Shown here: piece after piece, positions 2,635 through 54,874 of the stretch
Layout: the number at the start of each line of letters is the position of its first letter
Numbering within the stretch: the stretch's first letter is position 1
Assembly: GCA_002269645.1 (NCBI GenBank)
Contig: NIVC01001798.1
Location: forward strand, 62,001 to 126,000
Length of the DNA stretch: 64,000 nucleotides
Source of the DNA: Macrostomum lignano
Lineage: Eukaryota
Reading direction: 5' to 3'
Notes under the pieces: model-generated
Told to the model about the DNA's origin: nothing
Database searches by the model: none
What the model saw: only the letters and a program-made list of their open reading frames with translations
Program-made: the position numbers and the translations under genes

Positions 2635-3345
2635 CTATTTCAAATAGCGTTTAATCCTCCTAGTGCCAATGTCAGACCATGGGGTAAAATTATTAGACCT
2701 CAGAGCAAGCCGCAGACCTCTACTAGACTCGGCGTCTTTCGACGATTCCGTTGTTGCTAGTCTTCTGGACATTGTCGGCGTTAGAAGGCCCGGTGTTCTT
2801 GGCGCCCGGTCGAAGGACACGGCCCCGGCCAGGACCGAGTAGCCCTCCTCGAATCCTGTGTCCAGCTGGTGCAGCACGCCCCATGCGGACGAGCGTCGAC
2901 TGTCGCAGTCGACCAGCGAAGCCGACGCAGCCAGCTGCTGAAGTCGATCCTCCGATCCGACCGACGGCGAAGGTCGCCTCGACGCTGGCGAGAAGGTGTC
3001 CAATGGTTCGGACACCTCCGGACTCGCCCTGGGAGCTCGAGGCTGGTGCTGCAGCCACTGGCGGCCTGACCGAGGGTCGCCCGTTCTGCCAGCCGCTCGA
3101 CTCTGCCGCCTGGCCTCCATCCAGTCGCTGAATCGGCGCTGGCCCCGACGGCAGTGGTGCAGCAGCAGGCGCACGAGCTGGCCGTAGCAGGAGGCCGGCT
3201 CCGGAGACGCTCCGCTGTCCAGGCTGGATCGGGAGAGCCTCCGGCGCCGTTCCTGCAGCATTTTCTCCACTTCACGCTTCTTGGTCTCCGAGAATTGGGT
3301 TGCTATGACAACTAAGCACAGGTTGATCATGAAAAATGAGCCGAT
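2635..3345 (-). CDS. Cav3: Cav3 exon 6 (IS6, gating-brake region, I-II linker); 3' end uncertain, given to the first stop
   Basis: Acceptor TTCCTTCTCCAG|, then IGSFFMINLCLVVIATQFSETKKRE...SCYGQLVRLL. The frame is open to TAG at 2637-2635, and I saw no strong GTRAG donor. Confidence 0.85.
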   Translation of the reverse strand: MGSFFMINLCLVVIATQFSETKKREVEKMLQERRRRLSRSSLDSGASPEPASCYGQLVRLLLHHCRRGQRRFSDWMEARRQSRAAGRTGDPRSGRQWLQHQPRAPRASPEVSEPLDTFSPASRRPSPSVGSEDRLQQLAASASLVDCDSRRSSAWGVLHQLDTGFEEGYSVLAGAVSFDRAPRTPGLLTPTMSRRLATTESSKDAESSRGLRLALRSNNFTPWSDIGTRRIKRYLK

Positions 3346-4200: not shown

Positions 4201-5509
4201 ATAATCCATTGAAATGGGGATATAAAACTCAACTTTAATCAACTTTAACAGCTCAATGCTATTTCAAGGTGAAAATTAAAGATATTCCCCATCCGATCTC
4301 ACACCTATAGGCCATAGCAGTTCGCCATATCGACCGAAGACTGGAGCTGAGCTACTATTTATCCGCTTCCTACACTGATAGGGGATTTGCAATGACACTC
4401 ACTAGGGGGGGAATCAGGGATATCCTCCTAGTACTGGGGTGAGGATGATGAAGAATAAACCATGCAGAGAAGCGCCCCCAGCCTCCATCAAACCCAAGGC
4501 TGGGAGAAAACTTAATCCCTTCGGCCTCCCAATATACGCTCCATGTCCCACGGCGCAATCCCAGCTCAAACACAGTTGCATTGATTTGAATACCTGCACG
4601 CCTTCCTTGAATAATATGGGGGGAGGGGAATATAAAAAATTGAGAAATCGGAGCTTTCATCATCCCACGCTAGACGGCATGGTCCATTGTCTCCTGGCTA
4701 CGCATCGCCCCTATACGCGTATTTCTTTGCCAAAGCTCAACTCTTCCCCTTTTCTCCCACAGCTCTGACAGTCGCGGATGCAGCAGGCCGGGATAAAAAG
4801 TCTCCAATCCAGCTCAGCAGGGCGAGCTAATCGATCATTTCTGTCAACTTTCACACTCGCACTTTTATTAACCCCACCCGAATCATTGCAACAGACTCTT
4901 TCAGCTCGTGCATGCAGTTCTTCGTGTTTAAGCACCGCGATTGCTTAGTCCTTCAACCATAACCCAAAGAACTTTATTTGGAAATTCATTCATTGCTTTC
5001 ATTGCATCCTTCCGTCCCATCTCTTCATCCCATCCATTCATCCCTTTCCTTCATCGTATCTCTTCATCACATCCCTTCATCACATCCTTTCCTCCAGCCT
5101 ATCCCTTCATCCCATCCCCTCATCGTATTCCTTCACAGCATCCCTTCACAGCATCCCTTAGTTGCCTCCCATTCACGTAAATTTCAGTCCGAATCTCGTA
5201 CTAGACTAATTCCTTCTGCAGACCGTCGCTCGCCTGTCTCCATTCTCCAGATGGCTTCATTTTTTGACTCCTCAAATTTTTCTTCCTCATTCCGTGTTTT
5301 CTTTGATCCTCTTAATGGTGAAACGCACCGGAGCGTTCTGCCTGTTTTGGTTACGCCATCATAAAAAGTCGTTTGATCGCGACAGCAAGAAAGTGTAGTT
5401 TAAGGTTTTCGATAAGGTCAGACTGGGACCAAATGGTCGATAAAATTGTCGCTAGAAATCACGTGACGCTTTCTGCGTAATTGAGATTTGAATACTATAA
5501 ACGATACTT

Positions 5510-5800
5510 TGAATCAGATCACTCCAAGAATCAGATCATTCCAAGAATCAAACCATTCCAAGAATCAGATCATTCCAAGAATCAGATCATTCCAAGAATC
5601 AGATCATTCCAAGAATCAGATTATTCCAAGAATCAGATCATTCCAAGAATCAGATCATTCCAAGAATCAGATTATTCCAAGAATCAGATCATTCCAAGAA
5701 TCAGATCATTCCAAGAATCAGATCATTCCAAGAATCAGATCATTCCAAGAATCAGATCATTCCAAGAATCAGATCATTCCAAGAATCAGATCATTCCAAA
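5510..5800. repeat. 17-bp minisatellite (CCAAGAATCAGATCATT)n
   Basis: Direct reading; Cav3 intron 5. Confidence 0.95.
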
Positions 5801-5864
5801 AATCCAGAATGTGTAAAAATCCTTAAGGCGTAAACTGTACAAAAGCAATACAAAATTAACTTAC

Positions 5865-5957
5865 CACAATTAGCAGAACAAAGTAGATCCAGTCCCAGAA
5901 AGAATGCGCGTCTTGTACATAGTACATGATGTCCACCCAGCTCTCTAGACTGATCAC
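5865..5957 (-). CDS. Cav3: Cav3 exon 5 (domain I selectivity filter, start of IS6)
   Basis: [31 protein letters not shown] with the filter Glu. Acceptor TTTAG|, donor GTG|GTAAGT; 93 nt; phase 0-0. Not in the ORF track. Confidence 0.95.
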
Positions 5958-6744
5958 CTAAATGTGGTTATGGTCAATTAATGGTGCCTTTTAATGTCTT
6001 ACTCGTATTTTGTCCTTCCATCACAAATCTTCGTTGGACCCATTCATCCCAATCCCTTCATCCCGATCCCTTCATCTCAATTCCTTCATCCCTTCATACC
6101 AATCCCTTCATCCAAATCCCTTCATCCCTTCATCCCAATCCCTTCATCCAAATCCCTTCATCTCGATCCATTCATCTCAATCCCTTCATCCCAATCTGTT
6201 CGTCCGATTTCAATTTATTCACCCGAAATGCCTCTAAGCATTTATACTTTACAATTGAGACACTTCAACCTAAAACATACTGCAGCAATATTTTGAATTG
6301 GTTCTCAAAGAGCTTTGTTTTCGGGGGCAGGGGAGTTCATGTTAACGAATCAGTAACAGTTTTTTCCCAAACTTCTCAACCATTCTCTTAGTTCTCTTAG
6401 TCGGTAGTGGCACACAGACTTCACTGCCTCCTGCACTTGAGGCCTCTCACGCCAGCAAAGTTAGATTGCTAGGGCTCAATACCTGTGACCTATATTCCAC
6501 TATGTTTTTATAGGCTGCACTGGGCCTGAGTTGTTTATGAGTAACTTTCAGACCCTTGCTTATGTGTGCAGGGGTGCACGCTTCAGCGGAATTCCATTTG
6601 ATACCAGTGCAATCATGCTCTCCTTCTTCTACCTGTTCATCTTATACCTTTATAATCACTACTACGAGTATATTCCTTTATTTTAATCTCCTCTTCATTT
6701 TACTTCTTCATTCCTTTCTATGAACCATTTCTTCATACCGCCCC

Positions 6745-6950
6745 TTCCTCCCCATCCCTTCATCCCGATCCCTTCATCTTAATCCCTTCATCCCATCCCT
6801 TCATCCCAGCCTTTCAACTCATTCCTTCATCCCATCCCTTCATCCCATTCATTCATCCCAGCCTTTCAACTCATCCCTTCATCCCATCCCTTCATCCCAG
6901 CCTTTCAACTCATTCCTTCATCCCATCCCTTCATCCCATTCATTCATCCC
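6745..6950. repeat. TTCATCCC low-complexity repeat (related tracts at about 5015-5160 and 6040-6200)
   Basis: Direct reading. Confidence 0.85.
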
Positions 6951-6976
6951 AGCCAGCCAACCAAGCCGGAACCCAC

Positions 6977-7295
6977 CTGAAAGATGGCCACCCAGGCAAA
7001 ACCGATGTTGTCAAAGTTGATGGCACCCCTGTGCGGATTTTCCACACCGCTCTGGCACCTGGTGTAGTACTGGTTCCAGTTCACGCAGCTTGTGTTGGTT
7101 GGCAGATTGTCGCTAAACGGTTGCGCGGACTCGTTACAGGTGATGTAAGAGCCCCCGTCCAGCCACAGCACTGTGGGGTTGATATTTGAGCACGTCTGGA
7201 TGCCATTAGAGCTCTCCGAGGCGCATATGAAGTCTTTGGCAGCCACTGGGTTATCCACGCTGATGTTTAGCCGGTAGAAATCCGTGAGGTTGATG
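6977..7295 (-). CDS. Cav3: Cav3 exon 4 (domain I extracellular turret and P1 helix)
   Basis: INLTDFYRLNISVDNPVAAKDFIC...CVNWNQYYTRCQSGVENPHRGAINFDNIGFAWVAIFQ. Acceptor TTGCAG|C, donor CAG|GTGGGT. Confidence 0.95.
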
Positions 7296-7786
7296 CTGCA
7301 ACAGTTTGGGGAACATCAGGAAAAGACATCCTTGACATGACACTTTACTGACTGACAACCCTGACACTTTACTGACTGACAACCCTGACATTTAGTGTCT
7401 GACAACCCTGAAACTTTACTGTTTGAAAACCCTGACTCGTGACTTTTTATAAACCCTTAACACACCATATCTGACAACGCATATAGCCCAAAATTGTTTA
7501 GAAACTAATGTGTTGTTTATAGGTTATATACGCCCGTAGTTATGACCTATTTGTACAAGTACTTCTTTTGAAACACTCTATACAGGTAAATCTTATGAGT
7601 CCTGTCTGACTCTGCACATTTTTCTGTGTCTCAATAATACACCTGTAGGGCTGCACAGAGGGTCTGTCTGACACAAACCGACAGAAATACACCGCAGACC
7701 CTGGAACGGTTTCTCAGAAATCAACACAGGAGGATATGAGTGTCTGGTTGATCTGTGCCAGATCTGGTTGATGAGCCGTGCAAAAA

Positions 7787-8681
7787 GATAGAGACTGAGA
7801 TAGAGACTGGGATAGAGACTGAGATAGAGACTGGGATAGAGACTGAGATAGAGACTGGGATAGAGACTAAGATAGAGACTGAGATACAGACTGAGATAGA
7901 GAGTGAGATAGAGACTGAGATAGAGACTGGGATAGAGACTGAGATAGAGACTGGGATAGAGACTGAGATAGAGACTGGGATAGAGACTGAGATAGAGACT
8001 GGGATAGAGACTGAGATAGAGACTGGGATAGAGACTGAGATAGAGACTGGGATAGAGACTGAGATAGAGACTGGGATAGAGACTGAGATAGAGACTGGGA
8101 TAGAGACTGAGATAGAGACTGGGATAGAGACTAAGATAGAGACTGAGATACAGACTGAGATAGAGAGTGAGATAGAGACTGAGATAGAGACTGGGATAGA
8201 GACTGAGATAGAGACTGGGATAGAGACTGAGATAGAGACTGGGATAGAGACTGAGATAGAGACTGGGATAGAGACTGAGATAGAGACTGGGATAGAGACT
8301 GAGATAGAGACTGGGATAGAGACTGAGATAGAGACTGGGATAGAGACTGAGATAGAGACTGGGATAGAGACTGAGATAGAGACTGGGATAGAGACTGAGA
8401 TAGAGACTGGGATAGAGACTGAGATAGAGACTGAAATAGAGACTGAGATAGAGACTAAGATAGAGACTGAGATACAGACTGAGATAGAGACTAAGATAGA
8501 GACTGAGATACAGACTGAGATAGAGAGTGAGATACAGACTGAGATAGAGACTCGGATGGAGACTAAGATAGAGATTGGGATGGAGACTAAGATAGAGACT
8601 GGGATAGAGACTGAGATAGAGACTGAGATACAGACTGAGATACAGACTGAGATACAGACTGAGATACAGACTGAGATAGAG
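7787..8681 (+). repeat. 12-bp minisatellite (GATAGAGACTGA)n, left arm of an inverted pair
   Basis: Direct reading; source of the TEIE ORF. Confidence 0.95.
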
Positions 8682-9270
8682 GCAGTTACAGCAACTGACT
8701 CAGGCAGGTACAGGACACTCGCTACTTTGCTGCGAGGTGCAAGGCTGATCCCTGAGCTCGTCGCTGTTGGACTGAGGCGGCGGCATGAATGCCATGCTTA
8801 GGCAGGGATTAATCTGTCGGATAAATGAACTGCGCGTGGGAATTAAGACAAGGTGTGCCCGCGTTGGGAGGCTGCCTCTCTCACTCGGAGGATTAGGAGG
8901 AATTTAATGCCGCCGCTAAACACGGCAGGGGCTGGTTGGGTGTTGAGTGCGCGGGTGTCGGGCTGATGGGGTGGTCATTGATGTTGCGGGTGAGAGAGGA
9001 GTCCTTGTGGAAATCTGAGTGCCCGAGCTAGGCTGGGAGCAGCGCCCGAATGATGGATAGAGAGTTTGACAGCGCCGCGGAAACAGAGAATAACGGAGTA
9101 AGGAGGGAACTCTGCTTTCAACAAGACAGACGGGTATCTGGCAGTTTGCTTCGCTGAGACAGATCCCAATGAAATCGATATAACCCAGCGGGTGCGAGGC
9201 AGTGAACTGCGGTCACTCTGTGTGCATCTGCTGCCGCCTGCAGTGTCCTGCAGCTCCTACACTTCTCTAA

Positions 9271-10190
9271 CTGTATTTCTCAGTCTCAATCTCAGTCTGT
9301 ATCTCAGTTTGTATCTCAGTCTGTATCTCAGTCTGTATCTCAGTCTCTATCTCAGTCTGTATCTCAATCTGTATCTCAGTCTGTATCTCAATCTGTATCT
9401 CAGTTTGTATCTCAGTCTGTATCTCAGTCTGTATCTCAGTCTCGATCTCAGTCTCTATCTCAGTTTGTATCTCAGTCTGTATCTCAGTCTGTATCTCAGT
9501 CTCGATCTCAGTCTCTATCTCAGTTTGTATCTCAGTCTGTATCTCAGCCTGTATCTCAGTTTGTTTCTCAGTTTGTATCTCGGTCTGTATCTCAGTTTGT
9601 ATCTCAGTTTGTATCTCAGTTTGTATCTCAGTCTCTATTTCAGTCTCCATCTCAGTCTCTATCTCAGTTTGTATCTCAGTCTGTATCTCAGCCTGTATCT
9701 CAGTTTGTATCTCAGTTTGTATCTCAGTTTGTATCTCGGTCTGTATCTCAGTTTGTATCTCAGTCTCTATCTCAGTCTCTATCTCAGTCTCTATCTCAGT
9801 CTCTATCTCAGTCTCTATCTCAGTCTCTATCTCAGTCTCTATCTCAGTCTCTATCTCAGTCTCTATCTCAGTCTCTATCTCAGTCTCTATCTCAGTCTCT
9901 ATCTCAGTCTCTATCTCAGTCTCTATCTCAGTCTCTATCTCAGTCTCTATCTCAGTCTCTATCTCAGTCTCTATCTCAGTCTCTATCTCAGTCTCTATCT
10001 CAGTCTCTATCTCAGTCTCTATCTCAGTCTCTATCTCAGTCTCTATCTCAGTCTCTATCTCAGTCTCTATCTCAGTCTCTATCTCAGTCTCTATCTCAGT
10101 CTCTATCTCAGTCTCTATCTCAGTGCCTATATCTCAGTGTCTATATCCCAGTGCCTATATCCCAGTGCCTATATCCCAGTGCCTATATCC
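9271..10190 (-). repeat. 12-bp minisatellite (TCAGTCTCTATC)n, right arm, reverse complement of 7787-8681
   Basis: Direct reading; source of the LSLY ORF. Confidence 0.95.
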
Positions 10191-10449
10191 TACTAAAAGG
10201 ACACTGACCTGTTCAATAAACCTACTAAAGGCTTACAATTGAACTTTTATTTAGACATATAAAATGGAGAAAAAAGATGCGAGCACAGAGAGGGAATTAA
10301 CGGATGAGTACGCAAATAGATTAGCGGTAGATAGAGATAAGCCAGATGGCTAGGAAGCCTTCAAAAGATTTCTTTAGAGTAAGTAGAGCGCCCAACCGGA
10401 TGCAACCGTTCTGAGTGGCCGCCAGATAGATGGCCCAAAAACTATGCAG

Positions 10450-11141: not shown

Positions 11142-11414
11142 CCGGGATGCGACAGGTGAGTGCTGTTCATGGCCAGGTAGCACCGCTGCCTCAATAGTCC
11201 CTTCCACAGCTGCACGCCCACAATGCCGAAGATGAAGAACACGAAGAAGCAGAGCAGCAGCACATTGCCCAGCATCGGCAGCGTGTCCAGGAGCAGCATC
11301 ACTAGGATGCGCATGCTGGGTATCCGATTGATTGCTCGTAGCGGGCGCAGAACTCGAACGGTTCGAATGGCTGTTAAGCTGAGGTCCTTCGTCTGGGGCA
11401 GGAAGTCCACCGTG
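11142..11414 (-). CDS. Cav3: Cav3 exon 3 (IS3b, IS4 voltage sensor, IS5)
   Basis: [78 protein letters not shown]. Acceptor TCAAG|C, donor GG|GTGAGC; 273 nt; phase 2-2. Confidence 0.95.
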
Positions 11415-14844: not shown

Positions 14845-15300
14845 GATGTGTCAGGATCTGTGTCAGGATCTGTGTCAGGATCTGTGTCAGGATCTGTGTC
14901 AGGATTTGTGTCAGGATCTGTGTCAGGATCTGTGACAGGATCTGTGACAATATCTGTGTCAGGATCTGCGACAGGATCTGCGACAGGATCTGTGACAATA
15001 TCTGTGTCAGGATCTGCGACAGGATCTGTGACAGGATCTGTGTCAGGATCTGTGTCAGGATCTGTGTCAGGATTTGTGTCAGGATCTGTGTCAGGATCTG
15101 TGACAGGATCTGTGTCAGGATCTGTGTCAGGATCTATGCGATCAGGATCTGTGACAGGATCTGTGCGATCAGGATCTGTTACAGGATCTGTGCGATCAGG
15201 ATCTGTACCAGCATCTGTGTCAGCATCTGTGTCAGCATCTGTGTCAGCATCTGTGTCAGCATCTGTGACAGGATCTGCGCCAGGGTCTGTGAAGATCTGT
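14845..15300. repeat. 12-bp minisatellite (GGATCTGTGTCA)n
   Basis: Direct reading. Confidence 0.95.
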
Positions 15301-15371
15301 CAGAATCTGGGCTACGGTGTGTCATGTGAGAAGGTGACAGAAACTCGCCAGCAGTTGAGCAATGGACTCAC

Positions 15372-15617
15372 CCGGCAATGACAATGAAGCAGTCGAGTCG
15401 GTTCCAGGAATCACCAATGTAGCCGAGTCGGCCCCAGAATCCCATAGCCATCACTTTGACGCACATCTCCCAGGCGAAGAATGCGAACACCGCGTGGTCG
15501 AAGCCAGCCAGCATCTGGCAGCGAGCTTGAGTGCACTGCTCATCGTGGCAGGGCTGGTACATGCCCAGGGTGACGCAGTTCAGCAAGATCACCAGCATGC
15601 TTATGCGCTCGAACCAC
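15372..15617 (-). CDS. Cav3: Cav3 exon 2 (IS1-IS3)
   Basis: [23 protein letters not shown]...[44 protein letters not shown]. Donor GG|GTGAGT; phase 2-2; 246 nt. Confidence 0.95.
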
Positions 15618-15762
15618 GTGCAGCACCGAATGGTTTGAAAGGTTTGATTTGGTTAAGGAAAACTCAAAAGTTGAAATTCAAATTGTGTACGCCCACACAG
15701 CGGCTCTGACTTTCTAATCGTCAGGAATGTACTCTTTGAGCTGTAGTACCCCAGCGCTACAA

Positions 15763-16007
15763 GGGGGTTGTAGGTTGCAGCCTAGTGGTTTGGTTAAAGC
15801 GTCGGACTCGCGGCTGAAAGGTCGGGGGTTCGATTCTCGACACACTCGGAACAATTTGTGTCCATGAGCAAGACACAACTCTGGCATTGCTTCAGTTCAC
15901 CCAGCTGTAAAATGGGTAACCAGCATTAGCTGGGGTAATTGAGGGTGTGTGTGGCGACCTCCCCCCCCAGTCCTTGGACTGAACAGCCGTACGCAGCCTT
16001 CAGATGC
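15763..16007 (+). mobile_element. Same SINE family, 3'-truncated copy
   Basis: A box (TAGTGGTTTGG), B box (GGTTCGATTCTC), body aligns with the 3635 copy. Confidence 0.8.
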
Positions 16008-17423
16008 TCTTCCAGGACTAACGACTACAGACTGCAAGCTCAACAGTGAGCAGAGAGAGAGAGAGAGAGAGAGAGAGTTGTGTCACAGTGCAAACACAAG
16101 TTTAACTGGTTCTGGCACACAATTCATCTTCTCCCCAATACCCGCCTCGCCATGGTCCCCCCCCAACTGCCGTATTGAATTTGAGCAAGCAAGCAACTCC
16201 TCCGTTTCCTGCATGCGGCCTACGGCTGAAAAGTTCTGTTCGAGTCTGAAATCTAATCGACGACTGATGCAGAGCCAGAGAAGGAGAAAAAAATCGGAGT
16301 GAGTCTGTGTGGTGTGTGGTGTCTGTGTGTGTCTAAAACGGAAGAGCATTTTTGCGCGTGTGTGTCGGAGAGGAGAGAGTAGTGCATTACACTGAATGCG
16401 TGCACTGCAGCCCAGGCGGATGTGGGCAATGCCTTCGGCTTCCTATTTCATATGAGCTTGGCTAATGCAATTGAGGGGGCGATGGGATACCGTGTTGGCA
16501 CGATATTTTAATGCTTTGAATCGCCCTATCGCTGTATAAAGGAAAGGGGAAGTCAGCGAATTCTTATTAATGAAACGGGAATGACTGACTGACTGGCTAC
16601 CGCAATAGTGTACTGTGCTGTCCTAAAAACAGGTTAACTATTGATTTGCGCTCCTACCGAGCAGAAAAACGAAATAACATACACTATTCTTAGCTCAACA
16701 AGCCACCTAACACATGGCTCTTTTATACGCTACAGTGTTCCAGTGAGAGAGGAGTTAGAGAACTCATTTAGATTTATGGCGTTCTTCAGGACAAGATGAT
16801 CTTTTTTCAGTTGTTAAAAATATTGCGTGTCAAAATTCTCTGACAATTGGGAGTCTTGCCGAAAATTATGCTCATGGCCAAGATTAAATGAATGCCCAGG
16901 AGAGAAGATTTCTGCATGTTGTTGTTCGCTTCTGGTTATTCTGGGGCGGAGATTCTGATTTAATTTCTTTAGTTTTTTTGTCTGCAACACCGAGATACCG
17001 TTAGCTGGCGTGGAATGTAGTTATGCTAATTTTCCTTGCATCCCGCCTCCTGCCTGTTCCCTGAGCAGCCAGTCATGCGGAGAGACCCTACCCAGCTGGC
17101 GAAAGGGCTGCCCCGAAGCATTAATTCAATTCTGCGCCAGCTGAAGCTGATACACTCGTAATAAAAAGTGTTTTTAAGATTCCCGATTTTGATTTTGAAT
17201 ATTCTGTCGCGAATAAGTTTCGTGAATATTTATTTACTCATAATATTAACATGACATTTTTCGTTGTAAAAGTTTGAAAATTTAATCAGTTTAACATTCA
17301 ATGCTAAGGTCTATGAGTAATGGATTCTTTGTTTGGGGCCAGGAAACCCCGGGAGTTAAGACCATAGACTGTAGCTTCAGCTGCGCTCAAGCATTAGCAG
17401 CAGCATGTGAGCGCCTGTGGCCC

Positions 17424-17595
17424 TTAGGTTGGCGATAACACACTAACAAATGCTGGACTGACACATCTATGTAATATAGAATCTCTTAGGTTGGCGATAA
17501 CACACTAACAAATGCTGGACTGACACATCTATGTAATATAGAATCTCTTAGGTTGGCGATAACACACTAACAAATGCTGGACTGACACATCTATA
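17424..17595. repeat. ~61-bp tandem repeat, about 3 copies
   Basis: CTTAGGTTGGCGATAACACACTAACAAATGCTGGACTGACACATCTAT... repeated. Confidence 0.9.
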
Positions 17596-18834
17596 GAATA
17601 TGTGGTTTGAGAAGTCATTTAGCATGAACGTGGCCAGAATCCTCTACATGTATACGTGTATATAGACTAATTTGACGTCCCTAAGGGCGATGAAAATTAC
17701 ATTTATCCCCCTCCCCTTTTTTATCTTCCCTTGGCTTTCCTTCTCTCTCTCCACTCAGCTCCATCAACTCTTAGGCCAGTCAATTAAAACTGAGCCCCGC
17801 GGGGGGTCACGATTAGCGTCTCTGCTCCGCTCTATTTCGTTTAACTACTCACTACCCTCTCACTACTCTCTTAGGTCCTGGGCCAGTAAAAGTTAATTTG
17901 GCAGATTTTTGAGGCCTTTTTTTCTCGCGAATAAGTCTTATGTACTACGATCGTACTTAGGGCAGAGAGAAGCAATGCTAAAGGAGTGCCCCCCCCCCAA
18001 CGACCTCCCGCTCAATTCCTTTTTCGAGTCGTTTTAGAGCGAGTTCTTTATTCGTCTCGCATTAGTGTGTGTGTGCTCAGTGCTATTCTTGTAGTGCGGC
18101 TCCTCTGAGAACGCTAATACATCAATGCTTTCAGATATTTAGGCCTAGTTAAGCGCTTTATGTCTTAATGGCCTTCCTAATGAACTTCGAATGTTGCTTT
18201 AAAGTTTAAAATGAATGAATATAACATTTTTAGTTCCATTAAAAGAAGCCGAGCCTTCAATTTGAGATACGGGGCCAACCATATTCAACTCAAGCTTCGA
18301 AGATTCGCACTGTGTCTTAAATTCGATGCTCTGTCTGCTGTGCCATAGACTATAGACGGTGTTTTGACCATAGACGAAAGTGGAAACATTGTTTGACTAT
18401 GATTATCAGTGTTTTAAATATTCTTAAAATTCTTAAATAAAATGGTAAATGGAATTCGAAGTTGAAAAGATATAAATCTATCATGGTTTATCGTGGTTTA
18501 GTGAGTTCATCATGGTCCAATTCACAAAACCATAGGCGCAATCTATGATTGATTCATTAGTCTAACTCAAGTACTTTAGTCGTTATCTGTGGTATGGTCT
18601 ATGGCCAAAAGACCTTTGATTCATTGTAAAATCAGCGGGAGGGCACAAACCCCGAGACGACTGTCTATGGTAAATCCTCACTGCTGTGCTAACTACAAAA
18701 CTAAAACAGAGATAAGTTTCTCTGACACGGACAATACTGCTGGATCCAGTCCAGCCTACAGAGCTCAGTGGTCCATGAATCGGTGCTGATATAGACAATT
18801 CTAGAATGCATACCGGAATTAGAAAAAAGGATAT

Positions 18835-18968
18835 GGCCAAGTGACGGCTCTCAGGCACCAGTTCCTGACCGGATGACGCTGATGAAAGTAGCGCAACGCG
18901 ATAGGATAGAATCCCGGATAAGGGATCTCCTCTTCGGCTTGCACTTCCACTTCAATTTCGCTAGACAT
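18835..18968 (-). CDS. Cav3: T-type (Cav3) calcium channel alpha-1, exon 1 (N-terminus)
   Basis: Manual translation from ATG 18968: MSSEIEVEVQAEEEIPYPGFYPIALRYFHQRHPVRNWCLRAVTW-CC. This matches the Cav3 pre-IS1 motif (PYPxxxPxxxxYxxQxxxxRxWCLxxVxxPWFE). There is an in-frame stop upstream, and the exon ends at an ATATCCTTT U12 donor. Absent from the ORF track. Confidence 0.9.
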
Positions 18969-21214
18969 TATTCTGTTGGCGTGGCCGCAACCAACCGAGG
19001 GTTGATAGATTTGTTGCCAGTGACACTGAAGCTGTTTGCTTTCGCTATCCGGCAGGCAAGCATCATTTGGATGCCAGCAGCGGAGGCTCTGGCATCACCG
19101 CGAGTTTTAGTTATGGCTAACTTTTTCTTAAAGAAAAAATAGTAGTTGTCTGTAGCTAAATCTCGGTTTGGACGATGCAACTCCCTCTAATCAGGTCAGG
19201 ACGGTAGTGCTAGGACGAAGCTTGGGCCTCTAGCTACCAATGGATTCTTAGATAAGACGGTCTAAGCAGCCACCCCTTCAGAAGCTCAGGGGATCCATTG
19301 CAGTGAAGTAGGAGAATGGACAGAGGAAGACTCTAGAGATCCAATCACCGGGCAGCACTTCATCGCGGCTGCACTTACTCCTAATCCGTCTCGGCGATAT
19401 ACGTTGCGTGTAAAATAGTTAAAATACTAATAGAAGCACCCGTGCCGCACTACTGTTAGTAGCACTTGTCACCTTCATTTCTGTTTCTAAGAAACTTTCT
19501 TCAGTTTTACAGATGGGCGCTGCAGCAGACCAGGGCGCGTGTCCAGTATGTCAAGTATGGATTTACCATAGACAGTCGTCTCGAAGTTTCGTGCCCATCC
19601 CGCTGATTTTACACTGAATCAATAGTCTTGTGGCCATAGACATACTGGCCATAGGCCACGGTTACTACCTTCTTTGGACGCGTCAACCGCTTCAGAGGAG
19701 CGGTTCCGCCTAAAGATCATATATGCAAAAGATGGATATCACTCATTAACCACTTATGTGGCCATAGAAGCCAATGTAAAATAGTTTGCGTTTCGTGACA
19801 GTGCGAAATAAACTACTGAACTTAGTAGTCTCTGCAGTGCTTGTGATGGGTTCGGCCTTTTAAGCCTGTAGCTTAAAAGCCTGTAGTGAGAGAACTCTGG
19901 CCTCTCACTCCTGTCAGATGGTCAGCCCCGTGGTAGCTAGATTGTGGGCGAGCAGCTAGGTCCTATAGCTAAGAGAAGACAGCGAGAGACAAGCAGGGGG
20001 AATTTGAAAGGTAGAAATTAGCTAATCCGCAGACTAACTAACCCGCTGCCACCAGTGCGTGCGCCCCGGCTCACCAAACCGGAGCTGTCGAAATCGGACT
20101 TCCGACTAGAGGGGTACTGCACTTACCTGCCATCTAGTGTCTTTTAGCTGTCTATCCGAAGTAATAGCCGAATAGAAGGACACTGCTGGGACTCAGATCG
20201 CATTGGTCATGCAGGGACAGAGAGGACTTCTGCAGGGGTTCTTGCGCTGGCGAGCTTTCAAGCACCGCCCAATGTACTACCAAATTCCCAGAAGTTTACA
20301 TGTACAAGTACACGTAACTGCACGCTTTTGGCACTAAATGTGTTAGCAGGTCGACAGATAGCGATGATGTAGATGCATTGCCGCCTTTGGAGATCTTTAG
20401 ACTAACATTTATCTCGTTTTAGCCGCTTAGCTGCCTGAGACTGCACGAAAGTACCAGCCTGGCCCTTAGTTTGCATGTTTATATTGATTGCTTAGATCGA
20501 CTGATTGACTGGGAACTGTGCCGCTTCCGGTCCACTGTGACCTCTGCCCCTAGATCTAGCCGCTTATCTCAGCAGGCATTGTGAAAAAGAAAGAAAGCGC
20601 CAAGTCTTTAACTTCCAGATTTAACTTTCTCACTTAATCCGCAATCCTAAACACCTTAGATCGAGTCAGAGCAAATGGCTACTTTTAGTATTATACGGAA
20701 CTTCTGCCTCGATTTTGGCACACGAAAACAAATAAGCAAAAGTGCAAATCCTATCAGACTACCTAGGAAGGGGCCAGACAAGGGGCGCACCCAGTTAAGC
20801 AGGTCAAGAAAGTCTCTCACCCTACCAATCAGAGGACCTAACCGCCGGTTGCCAAGGATTCCACAGAGACCGAAGCGCTCGGATGGGATGCTGCTGCTGA
20901 TCTTAGTTGATGAGCACCGCAGTTGTTCTCCACTGGCCGGTTGCTGTCGCTGCTCTTAGATTACGACCGGGAAGTCACGGGCGATGCTGTTCAGGGGGAC
21001 TTAACTGGTGAAGCGGAAGCTGATGGGTGACGATGACCCAAGCTTGGGGGACGGAACGTCAGGAAGTTGACCAGGCAGGGGGCGAAGGCCGGTGGAGGAA
21101 GGATCACGAGTGACCTCGGCCGAAGGTAGGAGGAACGAGGCCGAAGGTCCGGAAACCCTTTCGAGGCGCAGGGGGGAAGAGCACGGCCTTTTCGAGCGCG
21201 AGCCGACGTGCCGC

Positions 21215-24710: not shown

Positions 24711-25269
24711 TTGCACCCAAACACACTGGCACCCCTATACGATTGAAACAGAACTCGAGTGCTTAAAATTCAACATTTTAAGCTTGCAGCGAATCGTAAA
24801 ACCTGACAATAAATGTACGGGTTTGTATCTGATGCAGTTCAATCCCGAAGGATCACAGAGAAGTTTATGACTCAAACAAACAGACTAGAAGCGCATCGTT
24901 GCAGCCATATCTAGCTATAGCTATTGCATTTTTTAAATACCCAGTCTGCCAGAGATTCACTTTTCTGTGTTTTTATGAATCGCTCCTGCATTTTGGCGCT
25001 CAGATTTGTGCAGGTTCACAAAGCAAAAAAACTGGCATCCTTCCTCGCTATTGAAAAAGCAGTTATTTTTTGTTGAGAGCTCTCCATTCCTGAGCAAATA
25101 TTTCCTACAAAACAGCCGGTAGATACGGGCTGCGACGAAACCTGCTTTTCTGACTGACTGCTTCAAGCTGCAATGCAGATTGGAAATTATACAGATGAGA
25201 GAGAAGCCGCCACACTGCGGGGCTTCGGAATAAACTGTAGATAGATGAGGCAGGTAGAAGCTGGGGCAG

Positions 25270-26285
25270 TCAAATTGGTGAAAAGGCAGACAAATCGGTG
25301 ATAGGGTAGCCAAATCGGTGATAGGGTAGCCAAATTGGTGATAGGGTACCCAAATTGGTGATAGGGTACCCAAATTGGTGATAGGGTAGCCAAATTGGTG
25401 ATAGGGTAGCCAAATCGGTGATAGGGTACCCAAATTGGTGATAGGGTAGCCAAATTGGTGATAGGGTAGCCAAATCGGTGATAGGGTACCCAAATTGGTG
25501 ATAGGGTAGCCAAATTGGTGATAGGGTAGCCAAATCGGTGATAGGGTGGCCAAATTGGTGATAGGGTAGCCAAATTGGTGATAGGGTAGCCAAATTGGTG
25601 ATAGGTCAGCCAAATTGGTGATAGGTCAGCCAAATTGGTGATAGGTCAGCCAAATTGGTGATAGGGTACCCAAATTGGTGATAGGGTAGCCAAATCGGTG
25701 ATAGGGTACCCAAATTGGTGATAGGGTAGCCAAATTGGTGATAGGGTGGCCAAATTGGTGATAGGGTAGCCAAATTGGTGATAGGGTAGCCAAATTGGTG
25801 ATAGGGTAGCCAAATTGGTGATAGGGTAGCCAAATTGGTGATAGGGTGGCCAAATTGGTGATAGGGTAGCCAAATTGGTGATAGGGTAGCCAAATTGGTG
25901 ATAGGTCAGCCAAATTGGTGATAGGTCAGCCAAATTGGTGATAGGTCAGCCAAATTGGTGATAGGGTACCCAAATTGGTGATAGGGTAGCCAAATCGGTG
26001 ATAGGGTACCCAAATTGGTGATAGGGTAGCCAAATTGGTGATAGGGTGGCCAAATTGGTGATAGGGTAGCCAAATTGGTGATAGGGTAGCCAAATTGGTG
26101 ATAGGGTAGCCAAATTGGTGATAGGGTAGCCAAATTGGTGATAGGGTACCCAAATTGGTGATAGGGCAACCAAATTGGTGATAGGGTAGCCAAATTGGTG
26201 ATAGGGTAGCCAAATTGGTGATAGGACAACCAAATTCGTGATAGGGTAGCCAAATTGGTGATAGGGTAGCCAAATTGGTAATAGA
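25270..26285. repeat. 20-bp minisatellite (CCAAATTGGTGATAGGGTAG)n
   Basis: Direct reading; about 50 copies. Confidence 0.95.
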
Positions 26286-26789
26286 ACAATTAATTGGTCG
26301 TTCTGGCACAAAACAGAGCAATGAAACCTTAAGAAGCACTAATGAGTAATGTAATCTCTTTAATGGCAGAAGATTAACAATAGCTGTTCCAACCGCTGCA
26401 GCGCAAGTGCCACCCAATTTGATGTTTAGTATAAAGCACTTTCATTTCTAACGACACAAAGAAAGACTTTTTAAACGCTTCCCCCTACTGGCACAACAAT
26501 TCTGATAGGGAATCAGAAAAATGAATTAAATTCAAGAGAGATCCTTTATTGCAGTGCTCACTTTAGGTGAAGTTGCTGGCTTGAGTAAAGCATTTGAATG
26601 CATTTGAAAATGATTTCACTAGCTGTTCATTACAATACCGGGGTATGGGGATTGTGACTCATCTGACATTACAGTCAAAATTGAGTCAGGAATTTGAGCT
26701 TGTAGAAGCGCACTTGACAACTGTAAGGATTGGAATGGAGTGGTATGCTCGTAGACCAAATGATGGTTTGAGAGAGACTTCACAGGTAG

Positions 26790-27575
26790 GAGGAGAGGGT
26801 TGAGAGGGAGAGGGGAGAGAGGGAGAGAGGTTGAGAGGGAGAGGGGAGAAGAGGGTTGAGAGGGAGAGGGAGAAGAGGGTTGAGAGGGAGAGGGGAGAAG
26901 AGGGTTGAGAGGGAGAGGGGAGAAGAGGGTTGAGAGGGAGAGGGGAGAAGAGGGTTGAGAGGGAGAGGGGAGAAGAGGGTTGAGAGGGAGAGGGGAGAAG
27001 AGGGTTGAGAGGGAGAGGGTTGAGAGAGGGGGAGAGAAGAGGGTTGAGAGGGAGAGGGGAGAAGAGGGTTGAGAGGGAGAGGGGAGAAGAGGGTTGAGAG
27101 GGAGAGGGGAGAAGAGGGTTGAGAGGGAGAGGGGAGAAGAGGGTTGAGAGGGAGAGGGGAGAAGAGGGTTGAGAGGGAGAGGGAGAAGAGGGTTGAGAGG
27201 AAGAAGAGGGTTGAGAGGGAGAGGGGGAGAAAAGGGTTGAGAGGGAGAGGGGAGAAGAGGGTTGAGAGGGAGAAGAGGGTTGGGAGGGAGAAGAGGGTTG
27301 AGAGGGAGAGGGGAGAAGAGGGTTGAGGGGGAGAGGGAGGAGAGGGTTGAGGGGGAGAGGGGAGAAGAGGGTTGAGGGGGAGAGGGGAGAAGAGGGTTGA
27401 GGGGGAGAGGGGAGAAGAGGGTTGAGGGGGAGAGGGAGGAGAGGGTTGAGGGGGAGAGGGGAGAAGAGGGTTGAGGGGGAGAGGGAGAAGAGGGTTGAGG
27501 GGGAGAGGGGAGAAGAGGGTTGAGGGGGAGAGGGGAGAAGAGGGTTGAGGGGAGAAGAGGGTTGAGGGGAGAGAG
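26790..27575. repeat. Purine-rich 25-bp minisatellite (GAGGGTTGAGAGGGAGAGGGGAGAA)n
   Basis: Direct reading. Confidence 0.95.
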
Positions 27576-28135
27576 TTGGAGGAAGGCAGGCGTGGAAAGA
27601 GAGGAACAGAGGTGTCACGAAGGTCAGATTGAAGCGCGCGATCCTGCCCAGTCCAGCCAAGCAGATCGCTCCGCAAAGATGGCAACAGGCGAAGGAGAAA
27701 ATTTGCCAGTCCAACACAGCCCTGCCAAGTATTCACAGCTTGGTCCCCATGCAGCTGCTTTCCGACAAAAAGTTTGTTGCTGACAAAAATGACTGCCCGA
27801 ATTAAATGTTATTTTCTGCACAAGCAATGCAGTCAGTTCACCAGGACAGGTCGAGTGCCAGGACAGACCAGCCCCAGCCCCTGTGAATGTTCCTTGTAGA
27901 GCTTTTGACATTTTCAAAATCCAAGTAAAAAAATTCAGTCCGTAGATGGCAGGGAACGAAAAAAGATGGAATAAAGTGCTTTTCGGCGGTGAACGTCTTT
28001 TACAACCATATCAGGAGATATTGGAGAACTAACCGACAGCTAGCGATGCTTTTATGCAGCATCCAAAACCATAAATTATTCAAATTTTTCTGTCCGAAAT
28101 CTTCCTTTTCTTCTACTCTGGCGTAATTGATAGAT

Positions 28136-34800: not shown

Positions 34801-35419
34801 AACTGTCAGTTTTTGAAACACTTGGATCAGAAGACAAGGTTTGAAAAAGAGCCGCATTATACTATTAACGCACAGAACAAAGGAAATAATTTAAAAAAGC
34901 TGCCCTGTGTATTTGGTGGTGAGTCTGAACGTGATCAAACAATCGATTGCTAATCCGAGGGAGGTCACGTGAATTCATTGAGTTTTCGAGAAAAATATCG
35001 ATTCTAAAGAAATAGAACTGCGAAAAAGGCGATTTTCTGTGGGAGAAATATAGGCCTTACCTTACTTAGCTAGGTTTGCAAGCCAGGTCGCACTAAATTT
35101 TGAGTTGACACTGCTTACACTAAATGCACTGCGGCCCCATGCCTCAGTTTCTCGTGTCCGTTGAAATTATTCTCTTCCCCTGCAGTTATTTCTGTGCCCT
35201 CACCGGAGTGACCGATTTCAATTTCTACAAGGGAATCATTTTTAAAGAGCTTTCCTAGCACTAATTTATTGCTATTTCAATTCACTTCGGTCATTTAAGA
35301 CAACCTGGATAATTTTTATGTGAAACTCCACGCCGCTAAGATTTAGCGGCGTGTTTAGCTAAGACACCGGGTAGCAACACCGAATCTGCTAAGGCTGCAT
35401 CTATATTGCACTTACACAT

Positions 35420-36112
<693 letters not shown>

Positions 36113-36124
36113 CAGGAAACTCAC

Positions 36125-36473
36125 CGAGCCCTGCCGCACGCTGGTGGCCTGTGAGAACCTATTCACGGCCGATTCTTGGGCCCGACGTCGCAGCCTCCTC
36201 CTCAGGGTGATGTAAATCTTCACGTACAGGCTGATGATGAGCCCAGCCGGGATGTAGAAGCTGCCCATAGCGCTGAAGATGATATAGCCTGGCAGCTCAG
36301 GCAGGGTGCAGTTGAAGGACTGGCTGGCATCGGAGCTGTTGCCCCGCTGAAAGCCCAGCACCGGGCCGATGCTGATGAGGCCGCTCAGGCCGAAGGCGGC
36401 AGCGATCATGGCCAGCACCGTGGCGAGGGTGCGTCTGGTGGCGTACTGAATCGGGTACCTGATGGCCGCGTAC
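36125..36473 (-). CDS. Aminergic GPCR, exon 2 (TM4-TM5)
   Basis: Acceptor TACAG|G completes [13 protein letters not shown]...[14 protein letters not shown]...LYVKIY; donor TCG|GTGAGT. Confidence 0.92.
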
Positions 36474-36609
36474 CTGTACACAACGGGCGTGTGTGCAGAA
36501 AGTCAGGGCTGCTGTGTGCATGAGTGTCGGGCCTTCGTACAGTATTGGCGCCCTTGTATGTGACAATGTCTCTGAATCGGCCGCCTGTAGATAATACTAA
36601 TAATATTAC

Positions 36610-36917
36610 CTGTCCACAGCGATCGCGGCAAGATTCAAGATGCTGGCGGTGCAGCAGAAGATGTCGAGCGTGGTGAACAGGGTGCAGACAACGCGTGGCA
36701 GTCGCGTGGGATCCACGTACACGAGAATCTGGAGCGGCATGACCAGGATGCCGACTGCCAGGTCTGCAGAGGCCAGACTGACCAGCAGGAAGTTCTGCAC
36801 CTGGCGAAGTGTTCTGTTGGTGAACACGGCCACTATGACGAGAATATTGCCAGAGATTGTCATTGCATCTAGGAGGCACATGAATGGCACGGCGGCCCAT
36901 TGAGTGCCGGATAACAT
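36610..36917 (-). CDS. Aminergic (tyramine/octopamine-like) class A GPCR, exon 1 (TM1-TM3)
   Basis: GN in TM1, LASADL in TM2, and LDIFCCTASILNLAAIAVDR in TM3 with the amine-binding Asp3.32. The intron splits DRY (AG|GTAATA). Confidence 0.92.
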
Positions 36918-37179
36918 GTTTTGGCAATTGGTTGAATGTTTTCCTCACTTTCTTAAGTTGCAGGATTTTAAAATCGAGAAGCTTTTCTGAAGAAAGAAAA
37001 CGATTGCTTTTTTATGTTTGCTAGCTGGGAAAGACTGGGTTGCTATTGGTTGTAGTGGACAACGGGGCAGCCTTATTGGTCCTGAAGATTGATGAGCAAC
37101 CAACGGTGGACTGACGCGATTAGGCGAAAAAATGCTGGATTAAAGTTTTTTAGAGTGCCCTGAGTTTTGTTGATTCGCG

Positions 37180-54310: not shown

Positions 54311-54874
54311 GAGATAGAGAGGCCGTTAACGTAGACTATGAATAAAAAGTCAATAATTAGAAGCAAAATTTTTAAGCGTTTCGCGAAGGCAGCAGTAATC
54401 CGGATGTCCGATCTCGAAACGATGTTGCAGATGTCAGTTGATATTGATGAGCCTTGAAAATCAAATGTCTAACGTAGCTAGGGCCAATTGGTTTTTAACC
54501 TGATTCAAATATTTTAAACGCATGAATGGACGTTGGAAAGTTGATTGGTGCCGCAGGAAAGCAAACAGAAACAGCCAATCCTCATGACTGCGCAAGGAAT
54601 TCGGCTAACCAATGACAGCACGAGGAAAACTGGTCATGTCTGCGTAGCTCGTAGGCCAAATTTTCTCCTCGTCGTTCAGTTTTTGAAATCTGGATGCAAG
54701 AACTTTAGATGGGAATTATCCATCTCTCACTCTGGCCACATCTATATGTAGCGCTTTTTTATTTACAGTTGGAATCCCAAATTCTGGATCAGCCAAAGGA
54801 TTTTTTATGCTTAAATCTGCTGACACTGGGACTAGAATAAGCCAGCGGATCCTTTCTCCCTATCCACTCCTTTT

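What the first reader, a model, noticed from the sequence alone, without database searches (positions are those of the whole stretch)
15618..18834. Intact U12-type AT-AC minor intron in an invertebrate T-type Ca2+ channel gene
Seen in sequence: Cav3 exons 1 and 2 can only be joined to give the conserved ...CLRAVTWP|WFER by removing an intron that begins ATATCCTTT, has a perfect TTCCTTAAC branch site and ends CAC. Established: voltage-gated Ca/Na channel genes are classic carriers of ancient minor introns, and standard GT-AG gene predictors mis-model such junctions. Inference: this genome retains a working minor spliceosome. That is notable if the animal is a flatworm or belongs to another lineage with reported U12 loss. 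The intron could be a rate-limiting control point for channel expression.
Basis: partly seen in the sequence, partly recalled or inferred. Interest (0 to 1): 0.75.

Follow-up and report, generated by a model that had tools for sequence, protein, structure and literature searches.

The report
Minor-class intron in flatworm calcium channel
The window holds the start of a T-type calcium-channel gene of the flatworm Macrostomum lignano, whose first coding intron is the ancient AT-AC "minor-class" intron shared by nearly all animal sodium and calcium channel genes: real and missed by every public gene model, but expected, not surprising.

Summary
On the minus strand, a coding exon (18968..18835) ends ...TGG CC| and is followed by ATATCCTTTTTT. 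A perfect TTCCTTAAC lies at 15660..15652. CAC|G at 15618 joins to exon 2 and gives ...NWCLRAVTWP|WFERISM. More than 100 orthologues show this sequence with no gap. No GT/GC-AG pair can keep WFER.

The locus is Macrostomum lignano, 100% identical to UniProt A0A1I8G4E0 and A0A1I8G6H8. All three public models fail at this junction. One forces a GT-AG splice that deletes 15 conserved residues, and two start inside exon 2.

The intron sits at the same codon position and phase as AT-AC/AT-AA introns in annelid, scorpion and mite orthologues. It matches the published "D1S1" U12 intron of Cav/Nav channels.

Flatworms are already documented to keep the minor spliceosome (Schistosoma, Schmidtea). The "notable if flatworm" clause therefore adds little.

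One real oddity is that the branch site lies 35 nt from the conserved acceptor, against an optimum of 11-13. Two in-frame AAC acceptors lie at 11 and 20 nt and would add 8 or 5 residues. Which acceptor is used could not be settled without RNA data.

Verdict: a new, unannotated member of a well-known kind, of low to moderate interest.

The parts
20821..20952 (-). 5' UTR exon of the Cav3 transcript, followed by the donor GTGAGA at 20820
   Evidence: The N-terminal 44 residues of public model P0362 map here at 100% identity. The homeologous copy has stop codons in this stretch, so it is untranslated. The donor was read.
18969..19088 (-). 5' UTR part of the first coding exon, with acceptor CAG| ending at 19089
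   Evidence: P0362 mapping. The sequence was read.
18835..18968 (-).
   Evidence: Translation. Aligns to Cav3 N-termini.
18827..18834 (-). U12-type 5' splice site ATATCCTT (extended form ATATCCTTTTTT)
   Evidence: The same CC|ATATCCTTT is found in the homeologous copy L002 and in Centruroides, Oppia and Capitella.
15618..18834 (-).
17423..17601 (.). 62-bp tandem repeat inside the intron, 2.9 copies here and about 50 copies in the homeologous copy
15652..15660 (-). U12 branch-point sequence TTCCTTAAC, with the branch A at 15653 or 15654
   Evidence: Conserved in L002.
15642..15644 (-). Alternative acceptor AAC|, 11 nt from the branch A. It would add 24 nt (FQTIRCCT) in frame.
15633..15635 (-). 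Alternative acceptor AAC|, 20 nt from the branch A. It would add 15 nt (IRCCT) in frame. It lies in the second copy of an imperfect 9-nt duplication, TCAAACCTT/TCAAACCAT.
15618..15620 (-). Acceptor CAC| that restores the conserved ...TWP|WFER. It is 35 nt from the branch A.
15372..15617 (-). Exon 2 (domain I S1-S2), ending GG|GTGAGT
   Evidence: It is 100% identical to P0241.
11142..11414 (-). Exon 3 (IS3-IS5). The flanking introns are GT-AG.
6977..7295 (-). Exon 4 (domain I pore turret). The flanking introns are GT-AG.
5865..5957 (-). Exon 5 (domain I selectivity filter, ISLESW). The flanking introns are GT-AG.
2718..3345 (-). Exon 6 (IS6 and I-II linker)

Best explanation
This is the Macrostomum lignano copy of the ancient 'D1S1' minor-class (U12-type, AT-AC) intron that interrupts the codon just before the WFER motif at the start of domain I segment 1 in nearly all animal four-domain Ca2+ and Na+ channel genes.

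Shown:
- The gene is a Cav3 (T-type) channel.
- The donor is CC|ATATCCTTTTTT.
- The position and phase are identical to AT-AC/AT-AA introns in other phyla.
- No GT-AG solution preserves the conserved protein.

Inferred:
- U11 pairs with the donor and U12 with TTCCTTAAC, and the minor spliceosome removes the intron.
- The productive acceptor is most likely CAC|G at 15618, which gives ...TWPWFER... I put about 0.55-0.6 on this.
- The unusually long 35-nt branch-to-acceptor spacing means that the proximal in-frame AAC sites at 15642 and 15633 may be used instead or as well.
- Any regulatory, rate-limiting role is a general property proposed for minor introns. It is untested here.
For: - **Sequence anatomy:**
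- **Gene identity:** the window's exons 2-6 are 100% identical over 497 aa to M. lignano UniProt A0A1I8G4E0. Hits carry PF00520 and are named T-type channels.
- **Junction:** the join matches orthologues without an indel. These comprise 19 sequences and more than 100 full-length Cav3 proteins that all read ...P/T/S-WFER.
- **No alternative:** no in-frame GT/GC-AG pair keeps WFER.
- **Orthologous introns at the same codon and phase:** Centruroides has CC|ATATCCTTT...TCCTTAAC-12 nt-AA|. Capitella has CC|ATATCCTTT...TTCCTTGAC-11 nt-CAC|GTGGTTCGAGCGC, and Oppia has CC|ATATCCTTT...TCCTTAAC-28 nt-CAC|.
- **Within-species conservation:** the donor, branch site and CAC are all conserved in the 94-97% identical homeologous copy L002.
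- **Literature:**
  - The D1S1 U12 AT-AC site is conserved in Nav1, Nav2, Cav1, Cav2 and Cav3 (PMC6259924).
  - Drosophila Ca-alpha1T intron 1 is AT-AC U12, with a U12 orthologue in human (PMC2831892).
  - Flatworms have minor snRNAs and minor introns.
- **Acceptor context:** the distal acceptor CAC fits the published YAS acceptor consensus. The two proximal sites are AAC.
Against: - No transcript evidence could be obtained. The only public model that spans the junction (P0362) uses GT-AG sites instead.
- The branch A lies 35 nt from the conserved acceptor. Reviews give an optimum of 11-13 nt and describe rigid distance constraints and error-prone 3' site choice (PMC3584512). From my own recollection, not retrieved here, Dietrich et al. 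2001 reported that spacings above 20 nt activate nearer sites and that the U12 spliceosome does not scan distally.
- No second branch-like sequence lies closer to 15618, and no RNA structure shortens the gap (z-score 0.43).
- No minor snRNA gene lies in the window. A 64-kb window would not be expected to hold one.
Confidence: 0.85

Rival explanations
1. Same U12 donor and branch site, but the acceptor in use is the proximal AAC at 15642 (11 nt from the branch A) or the AAC at 15633 (20 nt). The channel would then carry a lineage-specific 8-residue (FQTIRCCT) or 5-residue (IRCCT) insertion between ...TWP and WFER, possibly as alternative isoforms alongside the canonical one.
For: Both sites are in frame and free of stop codons. 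They sit at the optimal and the upper-normal branch-to-acceptor distances (optimum 11-13 nt in PMC3584512). The arrangement TTCCTTAAC + 10 nt + AC copies the Capitella layout exactly, and the extra 24 nt is a multiple of three. The one substitution within the 24 nt between the two M. lignano copies (CGG>CGA) is synonymous in this frame. U12 3' site choice is described as error-prone, with alternative 3' sites observed.
Against: None of more than 100 orthologues from arthropods, molluscs, annelids, amphioxus, rotifers and nematodes has any residue inserted between the Pro/Thr/Ser and WFER. The upstream WCLR.VTWP motif is itself conserved in this gene, which suggests fixed spacing to S1. The proximal sites are AAC, whereas the consensus is YAC. 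The mite Oppia also has a long spacing (28 nt) to the conserved junction in the NCBI model. Being in frame and stop-free has roughly a 1 in 4 chance expectation, and one synonymous change carries no weight.
Confidence: 0.35
2. The intron is removed by the major spliceosome through the GT-AG pair used in public model A0A1I8G6H8, with donor CCG|GTCAGG at 18869 and acceptor TTCGAG|CGC at 15607. The U12-like motifs would then be vestigial.
For: The pair is in frame and is what one deposited model uses.
Against: It deletes 15 residues (VRNWCLRAVTWPWFE), including positions that are invariant or nearly invariant across Cav3. The donor has C at +3, and the acceptor has no pyrimidine tract and lies inside the GAG codon of WFER. 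Sister models simply begin at the same AG (P0241, P0242) or at the next Met (P0361), which is the signature of a predictor restricted to GT-AG. The U12 donor and branch site are perfect and are conserved in the homeolog and in other phyla.
Confidence: 0.05
3. The locus is a pseudogene or the match is chance, and the two exons are not joined in any functional mRNA.
For: The homeologous copy L002 has a 1-nt deletion in the first coding exon. The bare motifs occur at chance frequency in the window.
Against: The window copy has an intact open frame through six exons with canonical GT-AG introns elsewhere. It encodes a protein about 60% identical to Cav3 channels across phyla. The motif placement and phase are identical to orthologues. 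The L002 deletion lies in a CCC run of a long-read assembly and may be an assembly error.
Confidence: 0.03

Closest known systems
The conserved 'D1S1' U12-type AT-AC intron of four-domain voltage-gated Ca2+/Na+ channel genes (Spafford et al. 1999; Fux et al. 2018, PMC6259924)
   Same: Same place in the protein, just before WFER at the start of domain I S1. Same AT-AC subtype, same ATATCCTTT donor and same TTCCTTRAC branch site. In the three orthologous Cav3 loci examined here the intron is in the same phase, after the second base of the codon.
   Different: The branch site lies 35 nt from the conserved acceptor, against 11 nt in Capitella and 12 nt in Centruroides. A 9-nt imperfect duplication in the spacer creates two extra in-frame AAC sites.
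Drosophila melanogaster Ca-alpha1T intron 1 (AT-AC, U12-type; Lin et al. 2010, PMC2831892)
   Same: A U12 AT-AC intron in the first intron of an invertebrate T-type channel gene, with a U12 orthologue in human.
   Different: The Drosophila locus itself was not examined here. Its equivalence of position is taken from the literature.
Orthologous intron in the mite Oppia nitens (locus L003)
   Same: CC|ATATCCTTTT donor, TCCTTAAC branch site, CAC acceptor and a long branch-to-acceptor spacing of 28 nt.
   Different: A different phylum. The spacer sequence is unrelated, and the NCBI model there already uses the AT-AC junction.
U2-dependent AT-AC introns (Wu & Krainer 1997, cited in PMC2831892 and PMC1557818)
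   Same: AT...AC termini, and they also occur in ion-channel genes.
   Different: Those have a U2-like donor, and the U2-type donor consensus is GTRAGT; only the terminal dinucleotides differ. Here the donor is the U12 consensus ATATCCTT and a perfect U12 branch sequence is present, so the intron does not belong to that class.

Membership tests
U12-type (minor-class) intron, AT-AC subtype | Extended 5' splice site /ATATCCTT | tested here: met
   ATATCCTTTTTT at 18834..18823, directly after the last conserved coding base.
U12-type (minor-class) intron, AT-AC subtype | Branch-point sequence TCCTTRAY near the 3' end | tested here: met
   TTCCTTAAC at 15660..15652. It is one of two TCCTTAAC matches in the window, and the only one on this strand.
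U12-type (minor-class) intron, AT-AC subtype | Branch site 10-20 nt (optimum 11-13) from the 3' splice site | tested here: inconclusive
It is 11 nt and 20 nt to the in-frame AAC| sites at 15642 and 15633. Classifiers accept 8-38 nt (PMC1557818) or -55..-5 (PMC7367187), so the intron would still be called U12-type.
U12-type (minor-class) intron, AT-AC subtype | 3' terminal AC (YAC), with no marked polypyrimidine tract | tested here: met
   CAC at 15620..15618. The spacer is 56% pyrimidine, with no tract.
U12-type (minor-class) intron, AT-AC subtype | Excision by the U11/U12/U4atac/U6atac spliceosome, with the junction present in mRNA | not testable with these tools
   No RNA data are available. 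There are no minor snRNAs in the 64-kb window. A junction pattern scan of metagenome contigs found nothing. Presence of the machinery in flatworms is known from the literature only.
Conserved D1S1 minor intron of Cav/Nav genes | Same position and phase as in orthologues | tested here: met
   Phase 2, inside the codon before WFER, in Centruroides, Oppia and Capitella as well as both M. lignano copies. Literature.
Cav3 (T-type) voltage-gated calcium channel | Sequence membership, shown by best hits and the Ion_trans domain | tested here: met
   About 60% identity to named T-type alpha-1G/H/I proteins over 436 aa. [quoted passage not shown] PF00520 is recorded on the hits.
Cav3 (T-type) voltage-gated calcium channel | Four-domain architecture with an EEDD selectivity filter | not tested
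   Only domain I and the I-II linker lie in the window. The domain I filter glutamate is present, within ISLESW. The other domains were seen only in the public protein P0362 and their filter residues were not examined.
U2-dependent AT-AC intron | U2-like donor (the GTRAGT consensus, with only the terminal dinucleotides changed to AT-AC) and no U12 branch sequence | tested here: not met
   The donor is ATATCCTT and a U12 branch sequence is present. The class is defined in PMC1557818 and the U2 donor consensus is quoted.

The most novel reading that the evidence does not exclude
In Macrostomum the minor spliceosome may handle this intron in an unusual way. One possibility is that it reaches an acceptor 35 nt from the branch point, which would mean a relaxed distance rule. 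The mite orthologue's 28 nt hints at the same thing. The other possibility is that it picks among three in-frame A-C acceptors at 11, 20 and 35 nt. That would produce Cav3 isoforms that differ by 0, 5 or 8 residues just before S1, a rare case of protein diversity generated by alternative U12 3' splice-site choice.
Probability: 0.35. Interest if true: 0.45.

Novelty: new member of a known kind. Interest (0 to 1): 0.27.

Why it matters
**Practical value.** Every public M. lignano model of this Cav3 gene is wrong at its N-terminus because of this junction, and apparently so are the models of its paralogues. Many models in other phyla are wrong in the same way. Allowing AT-AC splicing restores the true start codon and 48 residues (relative to the model that begins at RISM), including the conserved WCL...PWFE segment.

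**Biological value.** It adds a basal free-living flatworm (Macrostomorpha) to the lineages that keep the ancient channel-gene minor intron. This agrees with existing evidence that flatworms retain the minor spliceosome. It does not open a new question.

**The unexpected element.** The only unexpected feature is the long branch-to-acceptor spacing with in-frame proximal acceptors. A simple RT-PCR would resolve it. The result would say something about how strict the distance rule of the U12 spliceosome is outside vertebrates.

Tried and rejected
- **Rfam on the window.** At gathering thresholds there were no hits, so no minor snRNA lies nearby. A permissive scan of 15300..21100 gave only a sub-threshold sR60 match (23.8 bits against 50) and a lncRNA fragment, both treated as chance. 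ARAGORN found no tRNA.
- **Homology searches.** The first two returned only proteins up to about 1.75 times the query length, so the organism stayed hidden. A four-fold concatenated query got round this and identified M. lignano.
- **Fetching orthologous loci.** This failed for Patella and Elysia (gene range too long) and for Daphnia and Branchiostoma (isoform not on record). It also failed for the M. lignano entries P0241 and P0366, which exist in UniProt only.
- **Metagenome scan.** A pattern covering all three spliced AT-AC junction variants found nothing, as expected.
- **RNA folding.** Folding the branch-site-to-acceptor region looked for a structure that could shorten the 35 nt. Nothing exceeded shuffled sequences (z-score 0.43).
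- **A second, closer branch site.** None was seen by eye. The nearest candidate, CCTTTCAAAC, matches the consensus poorly.
- **A second U12 intron in the gene.** Introns 2-5 in the window have ordinary GT-AG ends. The only other RTATCCTT sites are at window 37416 (inside a tandem repeat) and 60445 (non-coding), and at L002 37925 (not next to coding sequence).
- **Representative-library search.** It found a paralogue, P0366 (M. lignano A0A1I8J4J1). Its model reads ...PYPGFYPISLTPSATKKTVGRQMPVT|WFER. I could not decide whether that stretch is read-through, frameshift or real, so I drew no conclusion from it.
- **Comparison with the homeolog.** Two substitutions in the 35-nt spacer are too few to separate coding from intronic constraint.
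Full report
**What is in the sequence.** I read the minus strand.
- An ATG at 18968 opens a 134-nt coding stretch, MSSEIEVEVQAEEEIPYPGFYPIALRYFHQRHPVRNWCLRAVTW plus CC. It ends at 18835 and is followed at once by ATATCCTTTTTT.
- Read-through reaches a TAA six codons later, at 18821..18819.
- About 3.2 kb downstream lies TTCCTTAAC (15660..15652).
- After 34 more bases ending in CAC (15620..15618) comes GTGGTTCGAGCGCATAAGC.... This opens a 246-nt exon that ends GG|GTGAGT at 15372.
- Joining 18835 to 15617 gives ...NWCLRAVTWP|[23 protein letters not shown]....
- The reading frame of the second exon is closed upstream by the TAA inside the branch motif (15655..15653). No AG lies between that stop and 15617.
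- I enumerated every in-frame GT/GC-AG pair around the two exons. All of them lose at least the WFE residues.

The bare 8-mers occur at chance frequency in the window: 3 against 2.2 expected, and 2 against 1.6 expected. What is far beyond chance is their placement. One abuts the end of conserved coding sequence in the right phase. The other lies within 45 nt of the next conserved exon.

**What gene and what organism.** The joined peptide hits T-type calcium-channel N-termini. A 436-residue domain I protein, assembled from six exons with ordinary GT-AG introns elsewhere, is about 60% identical to named alpha-1G/H/I proteins of molluscs, arthropods and vertebrates.

The homology tool lists only proteins up to about 1.75 times the query length, so I repeated the search with a four-fold concatenated query. 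The top hit, UniProt A0A1I8G4E0 of Macrostomum lignano, is 100% identical over 497 residues to the window's exons 2-6. Its cluster mates are also M. lignano. The window therefore comes from this free-living flatworm. The very high load of simple and tandem repeats is a general feature of the window.

**How the public models treat the junction.** All three fail here.
- A0A1I8G4E0 (P0241) begins at RISM, directly after the AG inside the GAG codon of WFER.
- A0A1I8G6H8 (P0362) maps at 100% identity to a 5'UTR exon (20952..20821) and to 19091..18870. It then jumps to 15607. It uses CCG|GTCAGG and TTCGAG|CGC and so deletes VRNWCLRAVTWPWFE.
- The NCBI protein PAA89963.1 (P0361), from a homeologous copy, begins at the first Met of exon 2.

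Truncated or read-through models at this point are common in other phyla:
- Capitella reads 'TWPYPF|RISM'.
- Ciona savignyi reads into the intron.
- Diaphorina, Anneissia, Magallana and Tachypleus models start at M..ILLNC.

**Is it the known channel-gene minor intron?** Yes.
- Fux et al. 2018 describe a rare U12-type AT-AC site in domain I S1. It is conserved in Nav1, Nav2, Cav1, Cav2 and Cav3 from choanoflagellate to human. Its consensus is ATATCCTTT / TTCCTTRACYCY / YAS.
- Lin et al. 2010 list intron 1 of Drosophila Ca-alpha1T as AT-AC U12 with a U12 orthologue in human.
- I checked three orthologous loci directly. The scorpion Centruroides has ...AAT CC|ATATCCTTTTT ... TCCTTAAC, and 12 nt beyond the branch A the intron ends AA|. 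The annelid Capitella has ...TGG CC|ATATCCTTTTG ... TTCCTTGAC TCACGATCAC|GTGGTTCGAGCGC, a spacing of 11 nt. The mite Oppia has ...AAT CC|ATATCCTTTT ... TCCTTAAC ... CAC|A, a spacing of 28 nt.
- Position and phase are identical to the window in all three.
- The donor is the U12 consensus, not a U2-like one, so this is not one of the U2-dependent AT-AC introns.

**The flatworm question.** It is a flatworm, but the literature I could reach does not describe flatworms as lacking minor splicing.
[quoted passage not shown] 2009).
- Schmidtea has U11, U12, U4atac and U6atac, and homologues from Clonorchis, Echinostoma and Echinococcus are aligned in the same paper (Schmidt et al. 2018).
- The pan-eukaryotic survey of Larue and Roy 2023 lists Schistosoma among the groups it now clearly finds to have minor introns and minor snRNAs, revising an earlier analysis.

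I found no statement about Macrostomum itself. The case here is new for that genus, but it is what one would predict.

**The one unexpected feature.** The branch A (15653) is 35 nt from the conserved acceptor.
- Reviews give an optimum of 11-13 nt. They describe rigid distance constraints and error-prone 3' site choice (Turunen et al. 2013).
- Classifiers accept up to 30-38 nt or search -55..-5. The intron would therefore still be called U12-type, but it is an outlier.
- Exactly 11 nt from the branch A there is an AAC| (15642), in the same layout as Capitella. Nine bases further on there is a second AAC| (15633). The second is the product of an imperfect 9-nt duplication, TCAAACCTT/TCAAACCAT.
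- Both are in frame and free of stops. They would insert FQTIRCCT or IRCCT before WFER.

*For the distal site:*
- More than 100 orthologues have no inserted residue here.
- The upstream WCLR.VTWP motif is itself conserved.
- CAC fits the YAC consensus while the proximal sites are AAC.
- Oppia shows that a 28-nt spacing exists at this very intron, at least in the NCBI model.

*For the proximal sites:*
- The distance rule favours them.
- The extra 24 nt is an exact multiple of three.

The homeologous copy is 94-97% identical and collinear. It keeps the donor, the branch site, both AACs and the CAC. It differs at two spacer positions, one of which is synonymous in the extended frame. That is too little to decide. 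No RNA structure bridges the gap. I put about 0.55-0.6 on the conserved acceptor being the main productive site. I put about 0.35 on proximal sites being used substantially.

**Mechanism and what is not shown.**
- Shown: the signals, their placement and their conservation.
- Inferred from established knowledge of minor splicing: U11 binds ATATCCTT and U12 pairs with TTCCTTAAC. The strong U2-type donor GTGAGT downstream of exon 2 could help exon definition.
- Not shown: any transcript, any minor snRNA or minor-specific protein of M. lignano, and any regulatory effect.

The 'rate-limiting control point' idea is a general hypothesis for minor introns. It has experimental support for Scn5a and Cacna1c in cardiomyocytes (PMC8767276). 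Nothing here speaks to it.

**Verdict.** This is a real, intact-looking U12-type AT-AC intron. It is orthologous to a textbook example, sits in a lineage already known to keep the machinery, and is mis-annotated in all public models. It is a new member of a known kind. Its practical value is for annotation, and it poses a small open question about acceptor choice.

Noticed in passing
window 17423-17601; L002 about 5086-8184: A 62-bp tandem repeat inside the minor intron has 2.9 copies in the window but about 50 copies in the homeologous M. lignano copy. The intron is 3,217 nt in one copy and 6,173 nt in the other.
   Followed up: partly
L002 about 3720 (equivalent to window 18922-18924): The homeologous copy (GCA_002269645.1, NIVC01000130.1) has CC where the window has CCC in the first coding exon. 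This is a frameshift, which is either an assembly error in a homopolymer or decay of that copy.
   Followed up: no
window 15632-15646: An imperfect 9-nt tandem duplication (TCAAACCTT TCAAACCAT) lies between the branch site and the acceptor. It creates the two AAC sites, 9 nt apart.
   Followed up: partly
L003 2745 and about 38800-38830 (Oppia nitens): The orthologous AT-AC intron of a mite has a 28-nt branch-to-acceptor spacing. It also has an in-frame A-A site at 10 nt. Long spacing at this intron is therefore not unique to Macrostomum.
   Followed up: partly
proteins P0366 (A0A1I8J4J1) and P0242: M. lignano has at least one further Cav3 paralogue (P0366, 71% identity in this region). The P0242 model starts at the same AG inside WFE|R. 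The P0366 model reads ...ISLTPSATKKTVGRQMPVT|WFER and lacks the conserved PR.WCL motif, so both are probably mis-modelled at the same intron.
   Followed up: partly
window about 35336-37100, minus strand: A neighbouring aminergic-type G-protein-coupled receptor gene. It contains TM1-TM3 ending ...AIAVDR, then an intron, then [10 protein letters not shown].... A long (GTCT)n microsatellite runs on in the same open frame, within ORF 35336..36481.
   Followed up: no
window 48457-54366, 61212-63272, 7755-10196, 24957-27736 and many (GTCT)n tracts: Very large tandem and simple-repeat arrays produce long artefactual ORFs, one of them 1,969 aa. Several sit inside Cav3 introns.
   Followed up: no
window 5865-5957: The domain I pore motif reads ISLESW, where my recollection of the usual Cav3 motif is ITLEGW. 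The filter glutamate is kept.
   Followed up: no
proteins P0006, P0014, P0023, P0037, P0039, P0013, P0017: In Rotaria (P0023), the nematodes Ostertagia and Aphelenchoides (P0013, P0017) and unnamed relatives (P0006, P0014, P0037, P0039), the sequence ...PWFERISM/PWFDR... lies within short called products. For the unnamed metagenome and read-assembly sequences these appear to be single open reading frames, which would suggest that the intron is absent there. That would fit loss of minor introns in nematodes.
   Followed up: no
window 16540-16594 (+): A weak, sub-threshold Rfam match to the archaeal C/D-box family sR60 (23.8 bits against a gathering score of 50, E = 0.025) lies inside the intron. 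It is most likely chance.
   Followed up: no
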